Shown: positions 15,001 through 18,000, counted from the first letter of the stretch. The stretch is DNA of 64,000 nt from Antechinus flavipes (GCF_016432865.1 NC_067402.1:219356001-219420000), one strand, 5' to 3'. Program-made: numbers and translations. Notes: a model not told the origin generated them from the sequence alone.

Positions 15001-18000
15001 AGAATCTTTTTTTTTAATCAAAGTCCCCCTTTTCATTCTCTATACAATTTCTGGAGGTTTCCAGACCTTACAACAATAGCGTTGTTATGAGCTTTTAATG
15101 CATTAAATAAATATGAATTCTTTATCTTTAGATCTTTTTAAAAATACCTCATGACCTAAGACTCAGTTCCCTCTTCTGGGATAGCTTCTGTCTTTTGAAA
15201 ACATCAGATAAGAACACAACCACATATATACAGAGCTGTGGACTGATGGGTCCTCTCCTCTATTCTCAGACTCCCTTCCCTGAGGCATTATATAGAATTT
15301 AGGGAGAGGAAGAGAAAAAGGGTCTGTCTTAACCTTTAAAAATAAATTAACAAACATTTATTAAGCACTTAATACATGGCCAGACATAGTACTAAGAGGT
15401 AGGGAAAAAGATGAACTCAAAACAGTTTCTATACTACAAGGGCCTATGTCTAACTATTTATTTACTTAATATGAAACTGCTCTAGTCAACTTAATAGGGG
15501 AAGAAGAGAGATATGGGGCTTGACTCCACAAAGATTAGTGAACTTATTAGAAAATGTCTGTGGATTTTTGGTTAAAAGTCATTGGCTCTGTGTTCCCCTC
15601 AGATAGACTTGAGCATGAGGACAAAGCATTCCCTTAACAGCCAAATGGTGCCAGTTCATGAAGCCCTTGGATAGATAAGGCTAATGTCTCTAAGATAAAA
15701 ATGAGGTAAAGAATATTCTCATCCACTTCTTCCCTGGTGAGTACCAGAAGATTGTTCTATACTCAAAATAACTTTTGAAGGGTTAATTACCTGAAACAAT
15801 TAGTTTCGGGAGTTAGGAATCAATCTGGAAAACTCATGGACTTTGAATCCTCCTAGGAAATAGAGGGAACAGGAGATAGCTTTGGGAAATTCATTAGATC
15901 ACCTCAAGGCATCAGCAGCTCAGGGGAGGGAATTTCAAATATCCTAAGTTTCTGGAAACTCCAAACTAATCAAATTGAGGCTATTTTCATATCCCAGAAA
16001 AATGTTCCTGGACAAGGCTATCACAATAAGGCTAGTTTCTTAGCCATCAGAATCATATTCTAAGACTCATATTTGAGGATTAGGGGAAGAAGGAGCTCAC
16101 AGGTATCTAGTTTGACATTCAAGAAAAGCTAGTATTTTGTTCTTGCCTTTTCCCCCATCCACCTCCAATGGTATCTGCTCTTAAGAAGCAGTCAGGAAAT
16201 TAAAGAAAACCTTGAATCCTCGTACTTCTCTTCTAGGGCCTTCATTTTGGCAGATCTTTCTTAGCAGTGGGGCTCTAAGATGGGGGCAGTTGGCCTGCTC
16301 CAAAGAAGCAAGATAAATGCCAAGCTCCCTGCTTCCCACATCCACACCCACACCCATTGTGGGGATATGGCTGGGAAGAGAAAGAAGCCCCCTCTACCTC
16401 TTCAAACCTGAGGCATCTGGTGCTGAGTCCCTATCCCTTTAACCAGGTTCCCTTTCTTCTCCCACTGTCCCACCCAGACCTGCTTTGGCATTTTACCCCT
16501 AGCAGTTCCATCTGTGTCCCTAAGGCCTAATCGAGATGTCACCACTAGCTCAGGCGGCTCAAGCCGTTGTCTTTGCTTAGCAACGCCAAACGCCCTCTCC
16601 CATCCTTGGCAAGCATAGCAAGGAACGCCCCCTCCCCCTTCCCTCCTCCCTTCTCTCTACCCCTCTCCCTTTCCTCAGGCTCCGGAGTTGTTTCTGAATT
16701 GGCTCCTTAGCCCCAGCAACCCCCTTCCCCCTCCCTCTGTCCACTTCCTGCCTGAACTTACATTATCCTTCCCTTGCTGGTGAGACCCCAGGGTGCAAGC
16801 GCAAGCCACCGCCTTGGAAACGGTGCTGGAGTGCGGGTGGTGTGTGCATGTCTGCGTCTGGGTGGCAGGCAGGGGTGAGCCCAGCCACTCACCTTCCAGG
16901 AAGCATGGATTCCTGGAAGTGAGGGGAACCGCCGTCATTTCATAGGCACCAGCAGCAAACAGCTCGGTGAGCAGGGGCCCACAGCTGCAGCTGGCAAGAA
17001 GTGCTCGGCTTGGGGGGGTGTGTGTGTCTATGTATGATTGAAGAAAAGGCTAGGGAGAAAGAATGGGGGGCGCTGAGGCTAAAACAGCTCTTTCCCAAGG
17101 CAGCGAGGAGGGCTGAGAGGGCGGGGGGAGGCAGATGCCCTCATGCCCAGCAGACAAAGAACAACTACTCAACAAATACCTGAGAATCCAGGGAGTGTGT
17201 GCAAGGGAGGAGGGAGAGACAGAGCTGCTGGGCTGGAGGGGGCCACAAGGGGCAGGCCAGCCAGCCCTTTACCAGCTCAGGCCCCAGATGCCACAGGACC
17301 CAGGACCCAGAGCAGCTGCTGAGGTTCCAGGACAGGGCCAAAGCCACTCCCTGCAATAAACATGGACAATTCTGTCCCTATTTTTTCTCCAGCAAAAGGG
17401 AGGTCTTTCTCTTAAGGGCTAGTGAAGACAAAGCCCTCTTTCCCAACAGCTGAGGGGACCAATAACATTCTGGCTCCTGGCATGTTCTGCTCTGTTGTCC
17501 TGTGCCTTTTTAGGGACCCTAACTACATCTGTTAATTCACAAAATCACTGAGCACAACTAAATGTGTCTGTACCATTTCTGCTTGCCTTCCATTCCCAAG
17601 ACTGCCCTCTGGGGCCCCTGTGCCACTCCTCCCTCCCCCAAGGAATCAGCCTTCTAGCAGGATGAGGCTTTGGCTGTGCTCCCTTCCAAAGGAGCTGAGC
17701 ACTTTAGTGCTGACCTACTTTGAAGGACTAGATTCTCTGATTTTGAGACCATGGAGGAAGAAGGGACAGGAAATTTGAGAGAAAGTGTCCAGTTTGTAAA
17801 AATAAAAAATAAAAGGAAAAACAGCATCCTCTATTCCCAAGTCCCTTTCTTTTTTTTAACTATTTTTTTTTTTAGCATTTTATTATTCCTGAAGGTTTGA
17901 AGTAATAAATGTTTCTGATAGATGTAGACTGATTTTGAGATAGTTTCTTCTAAAGTAGAATATGGATAAGAATGGAATTTATGTGGATTCAACTTATCCA

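What the first reader, a model, noticed from the sequence alone, without database searches (positions are those of the whole stretch)
16762..16849. The eutherian-type Eos N-terminus (MHTPP...) is frameshifted and closed here
Seen: ATG at 16849 reads [28 protein letters not shown] and hits TAA one base before the GTAAGT donor. The exon is 88 nt, and GSHQQGKDN sits in a different frame. Recalled: the human and mouse exon is 87 nt, MHTPPALPRRFQGGGRVRTPGSHRQGKDN, so the difference is one extra base after GGG. Inference: the long canonical eutherian isoform cannot be made here. The sequence may be conserved for regulatory rather than coding reasons and may have become coding only in placentals.
Basis: partly seen in the sequence, partly recalled or inferred. 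Interest (0 to 1): 0.72.

Follow-up and report, generated by a model that had tools for sequence, protein, structure and literature searches.

The report
Marsupial Eos exon closed by insertion
In dasyurid marsupials one extra base closes the reading frame that gives placental mammals the long start of the immune regulator Eos (IKZF4), yet the exon is kept letter-perfect, so it is probably conserved for a reason other than coding that protein start.

Summary
On the minus strand, the ATG at 16849 opens 28 codons and stops at TAA (16765-16763), one base before the GTAAGT donor. ATG to donor is 88 nt, and GSHQQGKDN lies in the +1 frame.

Narwhal, shrew and squirrel loci have 87 nt. The extra base is a T at 16804/16803. 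It is not an assembly slip, because three other dasyurid assemblies (Sminthopsis, Sarcophilus and one more) carry the identical 88 nt. Eutherians, crane, turtle and cobra all lack the T, so it is a marsupial-side insertion.

The second exon the long isoform needs (94 nt, LERD...) is only a weak ghost here, with AT in place of the GT donor, stops and indels. The marsupial Eos models seen, from 12 species, start at [14 protein letters not shown] (one at the Met just after it) or at MYSDEE.

"Coding only in placentals" is too simple. Birds and turtles have the same exon and ATG annotated in frame, as a 76-nt start or a 132-nt cassette.

Conservation is at the nucleotide level. The element is 100% identical among the dasyurids, and eutherians show almost no synonymous change in these exons.

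I read it as an old regulatory alternative exon whose ATG here opens only an upstream ORF. No reads could be laid, and no non-dasyurid marsupial or monotreme was obtained. The scan has not reported this elsewhere.

The parts
16762..16849 (-). 88-nt segment from the conserved ATG to the last exon base. It holds a 28-codon ORF closed by TAA.
   Evidence: Identical in L002, L003 and L004. 87 nt in narwhal, shrew and squirrel.
16803..16804 (-). TT dinucleotide. One of these two T's is the marsupial-specific inserted base.
   Evidence: This is the single gap column in A1-A3. The base is absent in 3 eutherians and in crane, turtle and cobra.
16763..16765 (-). TAA stop of the ATG frame, one base before the donor.
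16756..16761 (-). Distal 5' splice site GTAAGT.
   Evidence: Conserved in all mammals, turtle and cobra. Crane has GCGAGT and uses a proximal donor instead.
16912..16915 (-). 3' splice site: CAG at 16915-16913, first exon base at 16912, preceded by a pyrimidine tract.
   Evidence: The homologous site is the acceptor of the crane's 132-nt cassette. Invariant in 9 loci.
16893..16938 (-). Upstream ATG (MTAV...) plus 46 nt, ending in phase 1, followed by the donor AAG|GTGAGT (GT at 16892-16891).
   Evidence: Cobra P0182 and Chelonia P0149 join exactly here to the next coding exon.
16894..16918 (-). Two STAT-type palindromes 16 nt apart. They are mutually complementary and form the core of a predicted hairpin.
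14871..14964 (-). Ghost of the eutherian 94-nt second exon: no GT donor, stops, indels.
19967..20006 (-). Intact ancestral first coding exon ([14 protein letters not shown]), with a phase-1 donor.
   Evidence: Marsupial RefSeq models start here. Present in narwhal, crane, turtle and frog models.
12756..12758 (-). ATG of MYSDEE. This is the next in-frame start if a transcript carries the closed exon instead of the MDIE exon.
   Evidence: The Antechinus flavipes isoform X2 (P0255, 484 aa) starts here.

Best explanation
The stretch is part of an old, amniote-wide alternative 5' exon of IKZF4. It has its own 3' splice site (exon starts at 16912), an early donor (after 16893) and a late donor (after 16762). 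The exon is conserved as nucleotide sequence, not as protein.

Different lineages read it differently:
- Birds use it as a 132-nt in-frame cassette or a 76-nt alternative start.
- Turtle models use either donor, and the cobra model uses the upstream ATG with the early donor.
- Eutherians use an 87-nt start that needs an extra 94-nt exon to regain frame.

In the lineage of this dasyurid a single T was inserted at 16804/16803. The conserved ATG (16849) then opens only a 28-codon upstream ORF that ends one base before the splice donor.

Marsupial Eos is therefore made from the ancestral [14 protein letters not shown] exon. From transcripts that carry this exon instead, it would be made from the downstream MYSDEE start, or possibly from the MTAV ATG through the early donor.

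Shown here: the insertion, its sharing among dasyurids, its polarity, the lack of a usable second exon, and the nucleotide-level conservation.

Inferred: that the exon is included in marsupial mRNAs and acts as a translational or splicing control element.
For: - Sequence and frames.
- One-base gap against three eutherians.
- Identical 88 nt in L002-L004.
- Sauropsids lack the T.
- Conservation within dasyurids: 210 nt with no difference, where 9-16 are expected from the intron background (P = 8e-5 and 2e-7).
- Conservation by block, marsupial against narwhal: upstream non-coding block 98%, ORF part 87.5%. Substitutions in the ORF are mostly non-synonymous in the eutherian frame.
- Eutherian exons differ at 1-2 of 181 nt, against 21-32 synonymous changes in 261 nt of the ZF1 exon.
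- Ghost second exon.
- N-termini of the marsupial RefSeq models seen, including an Antechinus isoform that starts at MYSDEE.
- Bird, turtle and cobra models use the same exon in other ways.
- RNA-run contigs of a close relative hold 58-61% of the words of 16650-17000. That is about what an exon ending at 16762 would give.
Against:
- Only dasyurids were sampled among marsupials. Opossum, bilby and wallaby look-ups failed.
- No monotreme was obtained, so the age of the insertion and the ancestral therian state remain open.
- The bird and turtle coding readings are computed gene models, not proven proteins.
- Perfect conservation could reflect a DNA-level element (STAT sites) rather than an RNA or uORF role.
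Confidence: 0.68

Rival explanations
1. Marsupial loss. The therian ancestor already made the two-exon long N-terminus, and dasyurids (or all marsupials) lost it. The 88-nt exon and the ghost 94-nt exon are then relics of former coding exons.
For: The T insertion is derived on the marsupial side. A weak but syntenic homologue of the 94-nt exon survives in dasyurids (67% over 74-89 nt, E 1e-5 to 1e-4). Neutral sequence would hardly stay alignable for that long.
Against: The 88-nt exon is not decaying; it is 100% identical among dasyurids. No trace of the 94-nt exon was found in the crane, turtle or cobra loci. Eutherian conservation of both exons is not of the coding type. Sauropsid models join the first exon directly to the next coding exon.
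Confidence: 0.17
2. Not an exon in marsupials at all. The block is kept only as a DNA regulatory element of IKZF4, for example a STAT5-responsive intronic enhancer or internal promoter. Its ATG and splice signals are then irrelevant here.
For: Two invariant TTCnnnGAA palindromes lie 16 nt apart, where about 2 are expected in the whole 64 kb. IL-2/STAT5 drives Ikzf4 in mouse T cells (bioRxiv 10.1101/2022.11.02.514868, read; that paper tested the promoter, not this site). Conservation runs into the flanks.
Against: The most conserved letters also include a perfect 3' splice site, two consensus donors and the ATG. These are used in bird, turtle, cobra and eutherian models. RNA-run contigs hold about 60% of the stretch. 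The Antechinus models that start at MYSDEE imply transcripts with other 5' exons.
Confidence: 0.12
3. Assembly or sequencing error. The true exon is 87 nt and the long isoform is intact.
For: A single-base indel is the commonest assembly error, and no reads could be laid.
Against: Four assemblies of at least three dasyurid genera agree letter for letter. The site is a TT, not a long homopolymer. Runs of two organism labels from 10 studies hold 94-100% of the sampled words. The second exon is broken independently.
Confidence: 0.02
4. The 28-codon ORF encodes a functional small peptide of its own.
For: The ATG is conserved in most amniotes, and its context has A at -3.
Against: The peptide after the first 15 residues differs completely between lineages because the frame differs. 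The ATG is lost in cobra. In one parrot model the homologous residue is Leu rather than Met. Conservation in dasyurids and eutherians shows no synonymous drift, so it is not of the coding type.
Confidence: 0.02

Closest known systems
Eutherian IKZF4 long-isoform start (MHTPP...GKDN exon of 87 nt plus LERD...MESLFCES exon of 94 nt; 585-aa Eos, e.g. P0125, narwhal L001)
   Same: Homologous exon, same ATG, same distal GTAAGT donor. About 91% identity over the 270 nt aligned in A1, including the flanks.
   Different: The exon here is 88 nt with TAA before the donor. The second exon has no GT donor, carries stops and is barely alignable. No marsupial model seen uses this start.
Bird IKZF4 132-nt in-frame cassette and 76-nt alternative start (P0150 and L005 7015-7146; P0159, P0168)
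   Same: Same 3' splice site, same ATG, homologous sequence (about 74% identity in the ORF part).
   Different: Birds splice at a proximal donor (CAAG|GTAGAA). Mammals have lost it (GGGAAGG). Frame and length differ.
Cobra and sea-turtle start through the early donor (P0182 MTAV...FLEG joined to the next exon; P0149)
   Same: The window keeps this ATG, the 46-nt phase-1 ORF and the AAG|GTGAGT donor intact.
   Different: No marsupial model seen uses it.
Upstream ORFs in 5' leader exons of transcription-factor genes, and ultraconserved alternative exons (general classes, named from my own knowledge)
   Same: An ATG-initiated short ORF closed before the main ORF. Extreme nucleotide conservation that runs past the exon borders.
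   Different: Inclusion in mRNA and any effect on translation or splicing are untested here. The classic ultraconserved definition rests on human, mouse and rat, which I did not compare.

Membership tests
Eutherian-type long Eos N-terminus | ATG-initiated first exon open to its donor in phase 0 (87 nt) | tested here: not met
   88 nt, with TAA one base before the donor. Narwhal, shrew and squirrel have 87 nt.
Eutherian-type long Eos N-terminus | 94-nt second exon with AG acceptor, GT donor and open frame including the internal Met | tested here: not met
   AT in place of GT, two stops, Met replaced, 16-nt insertion.
Eutherian-type long Eos N-terminus | Annotated or observed protein starting MHTPP in the species group | tested here: not met
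   The 16 marsupial models seen, from 12 species, start at MDIE (some with an upstream extension, one at the Met just after it) or at MYSDEE. Only part of the large 90% clusters could be listed.
Sauropsid-type in-frame use of the exon | Proximal GT donor giving 76 nt from the ATG (phase 1), or a cassette length divisible by 3 | tested here: not met
   Mammals read GGGAAGG where sauropsids read GGTAGA. The marsupial cassette from acceptor to distal donor is 151 nt.
uORF-bearing 5' leader exon | ATG with a stop before or out of frame with the main ORF | tested here: met
   28 codons plus TAA. The ATG context is A at -3.
uORF-bearing 5' leader exon | The exon is present in mature mRNA upstream of the main start | tested here: inconclusive
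Indirect evidence only: RNA-run contigs hold 58-61% of the words, and Antechinus isoform X2 starts at MYSDEE.
Nucleotide-level (ultraconserved-like) element | Conservation well above neutral and above the synonymous rate, extending beyond the exon borders | tested here: met
   Dasyurids differ at 0 of 210 nt against a 4.5-7.4% background. Eutherians differ at 1-2 of 181 nt against 15-22 expected.
Tandem STAT (GAS) site | TTCnnnGAA motifs, conserved | tested here: met
   Two motifs at 16894-16918, invariant in 9 loci.
Tandem STAT (GAS) site | STAT binding and cytokine response at this site | not testable with these tools
   The only paper read tested the mouse promoter region, not this element.

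The most novel reading that the evidence does not exclude
The exons that databases treat as the canonical start of placental Eos may be primarily an ultraconserved RNA or DNA control module. The module would consist of a hairpin that pairs a 3' splice site with a 5' splice site, built from two STAT-type palindromes, plus a conserved ATG. It would govern which 5' exon and which start codon IKZF4 uses across amniotes. On this reading the MHTPP protein start is a lineage-specific by-product, and dasyurids are a natural experiment: they keep the module intact without that coding reading.
Probability: 0.3. Interest if true: 0.6.

Novelty: new variant of a known kind. Interest (0 to 1): 0.42.

Why it matters
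Eos is studied almost only as the 585-aa placental protein. This locus shows that its first 61 residues are not a shared mammalian feature. Dasyurid marsupials cannot make them, and the marsupial models seen from 12 species do not use them.

The exons that encode those residues are nevertheless conserved far beyond coding need, in placentals as well. That points to a control function in splice choice, start-codon choice or cytokine-responsive regulation of IKZF4, which has apparently not been described.

It also gives a clean comparative handle. The same exon is read in at least four different ways in birds, turtles, snakes and placentals, and is closed in dasyurids.

The frameshift by itself is a modest, lineage-specific annotation fact.

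Tried and rejected
The tool called this a filter that also trips by chance. There is therefore no read-level or junction evidence.
All later window references sent to search tools avoid those places. Two local protein-against-window comparisons read the window file only as subject.
- The joined, spliced Eos model of the window was not built or searched. Exons were searched one by one by reference.
- P0002 is a Logan contig product that looks like a spliced eutherian mRNA read out of frame. It could be human, so I did not fetch or compare its contig.
- Look-ups failed for bilby (P0133), wallaby (P0234), opossum (P0240) and spadefoot toad (P0231), as the product was not on record. As a result I obtained no non-dasyurid marsupial, monotreme or amphibian locus.
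- P0244, a 51-aa member of the marsupial cluster, is unrelated to this locus.
- Rfam gave nothing in 16400-17300.
- Alternative GT sites inside the 88 nt: only GCG|GTGGCT (40 nt from the ATG, phase 1) would be in frame. It is a weak donor and is absent in eutherians, so I rejected it.
- A resemblance between the CpG-island ORF at 31994-32491 and turtle N-terminal extensions was not significant.
- The big representative search was not run. At 50% clustering it could not resolve species-level N-termini.

Full report
**What is in the window**

The window carries IKZF4 (Eos), SUOX and RAB5B, all on the minus strand.

The Eos exons are 99.2% identical to Antechinus flavipes and 98.8% identical to Sarcophilus in the last exon. 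The species is therefore a dasyurid close to Antechinus but not that reference.

The IKZF4 coding exons found are:
- the [14 protein letters not shown] exon (ATG at 20006, last base 19967, phase 1);
- the next coding exon near 13950;
- the ZF1 exon holding MYSDEE (ATG at 12758);
- three further exons and the last exon at 5241-5990.

**The observation**

On the minus strand, the ATG at 16849 is followed by 28 codons and TAA at 16765-16763. One more base follows, and then the GTAAGT donor. ATG to donor is 88 nt, and GSHQQGKDN lies in frame +1. The description is exact.

**Comparison with placentals, using tool-given non-human loci**

An ORF spanning the exon found a narwhal hypothetical protein, whose locus I fetched (L001). 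It holds four relevant exons:
- an MDIE exon;
- an 87-nt MHTPP...GKDN exon with a GTAAGT donor;
- a 94-nt LERD...MESLFCES exon;
- the next coding exon.

Shrew (L008) and squirrel (L009) have the same 87 nt. The alignment shows one gap only, marsupial GGCTTGCGC against GGC-CGCGT.

Sminthopsis crassicaudata (L002), Sarcophilus harrisii (L003) and one more dasyurid assembly (L004) carry the identical 88 nt. The window differs from each of them elsewhere, so these are separate genomes.

Crane (L005), loggerhead turtle (L006) and cobra (L007) lack the T, as the eutherians do. By parsimony it is an insertion on the marsupial side.

In one search, runs under two organism labels from ten studies held 94-100% of the sampled words of 16650-17000.

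I could not lay reads. 

The 94-nt exon has only a weak syntenic ghost at about 14871-14964:
- 67% identity over 74-89 nt;
- a 16-nt insertion;
- two stops;
- the internal Met replaced;
- AT where eutherians have the GT donor.

Sixteen marsupial RefSeq Eos models from 12 species start at [14 protein letters not shown] (some with an upstream extension, one at the Met just after it) or, in one Antechinus isoform, at MYSDEE. None starts at MHTPP. Only part of the large clusters could be listed.

**The exon is much older than placentals**

The element aligns in crane, turtle and cobra at about 74% over 200 nt. Annotated sauropsid proteins use it in several ways:
- Birds insert it as a 132-nt in-frame cassette. 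The acceptor is homologous to window 16912, and the donor is CAAG|GTAGAA, 10 nt before the mammalian one. I verified this on L005 7015-7146.
- Birds also start at the same ATG, with 76 nt in phase 1 (P0159, P0168).
- Turtle models use either donor, in two frames.
- The cobra has lost the ATG. Its model starts at the upstream MTAV ATG and splices at AAG|GTGAGT (P0182).

Mammals have lost the proximal donor and carry one more G there. That gives 87 nt in phase 0, which does not fit the phase-1 next exon. Placentals bridge the mismatch with the 94-nt exon.

Dasyurids have 88 nt, which is phase 1 and would fit the next exon. The shifted frame, however, reads TAA at the last codon.

What is placental-specific in my sample is the two-exon arrangement. 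No trace of the 94-nt exon was found in the three sauropsid loci.

**Conservation is at the nucleotide level**

- The four dasyurids show no difference in about 210 nt. The surrounding intron differs by 7.4% (Sminthopsis) and 4.5% (Sarcophilus). The expected counts are 15.6 and 9.4 differences, giving P = 2e-7 and 8e-5.
- Between marsupial and narwhal, the non-coding block from the MTAV ATG to the early donor is 98% identical. The ORF part is 87.5% identical, and most of its substitutions would change the placental protein.
- Among narwhal, shrew and squirrel, the 87-nt and 94-nt exons differ at 1-2 of 181 nt. The ZF1 exon of the same genes has 21-32 synonymous and no non-synonymous changes in 261 nt.

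Even in placentals, therefore, these exons are constrained well beyond coding need.

**What might be constrained**

The invariant core holds several features:
- a pyrimidine tract and CAG|G acceptor;
- two STAT-type palindromes 16 nt apart that are each other's reverse complement;
- the early consensus donor.

As RNA, these fold into a 16-23 bp hairpin (-25 kcal/mol, z -2.1). The hairpin is kept in six species with only G-U-type one-sided changes and a variable loop. There is no decisive covariation.

A preprint shows that IL-2/STAT5 induces Ikzf4 through its promoter. It did not test this site. Rfam has no match.

**Most likely working**

In dasyurids the ATG at 16849 opens an upstream ORF in an alternative 5' exon. 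Eos itself starts at the MDIE exon. From transcripts that carry this exon instead, it starts at MYSDEE or through the MTAV/early-donor join.

The insertion, its sharing, its polarity, the dead second exon and the conservation pattern are shown. Exon inclusion and any control role are inferred.

**Rivals considered**

- Marsupial loss of a therian coding start (0.17).
- A DNA-only regulatory element (0.12).
- Assembly error (0.02).
- A functional small peptide (0.02).

- The joined spliced model was not built or searched.
- The contig of P0002, which may be human, was not fetched.
- The large representative search was not used.
- A literature search found no paper on marsupial Eos isoforms.

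Noticed in passing
window 16893-16938 (-): An upstream ATG (MTAV...) plus 46 nt ends in phase 1 at a perfect AAG|GTGAGT donor and would join the next coding exon in frame. A cobra model (P0182) and a green-turtle model (P0149) use exactly this join. The block is 98% identical between marsupial and narwhal.
   Followed up: partly
window 16894-16918 (-): Two STAT-type palindromes (TTCCAGGAA and TTCCTGGAA) lie 16 nt apart and are invariant in nine amniote loci. They are mutually complementary and form the core of a predicted RNA hairpin covering the 3' splice site and the early donor.
   Followed up: partly
L001 10090-10176 and 11929-12022; L008; L009: In placentals the two exons of the 'canonical' Eos start show almost no synonymous change (1-2 of 181 nt). 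The ZF1 exon of the same genes shows 21-32 synonymous changes in 261 nt. Flanking intron is also 97-100% identical for tens of bases.
   Followed up: yes
L005 7015-7146 (crane): Birds carry the homologous exon as a 132-nt in-frame cassette between the MDIE exon and the next coding exon. This is the 570-aa isoform X1 in many species, so bird Eos has a 44-residue insert that mammals cannot make.
   Followed up: partly
window 14871-14964 (-): Ghost of the placental 94-nt exon, with an AT donor, two stops and a 16-nt insertion. It is 89-90% identical among dasyurids, slightly below the intron background.
   Followed up: yes
proteins P0269 and P0271: Two primate proteins named sulfite oxidase sit in the 90% cluster of 585-aa Eos. 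This suggests SUOX-IKZF4 read-through models or misnaming. In the turtle locus L006 the SUOX and IKZF4 gene ranges overlap.
   Followed up: no
window 16941-16946 (-): In dasyurids an extra ATG sits 5 nt before the MTAV ATG (ATGAAATGA) and makes a two-codon mini-ORF that overlaps it. Narwhal lacks this ATG.
   Followed up: no
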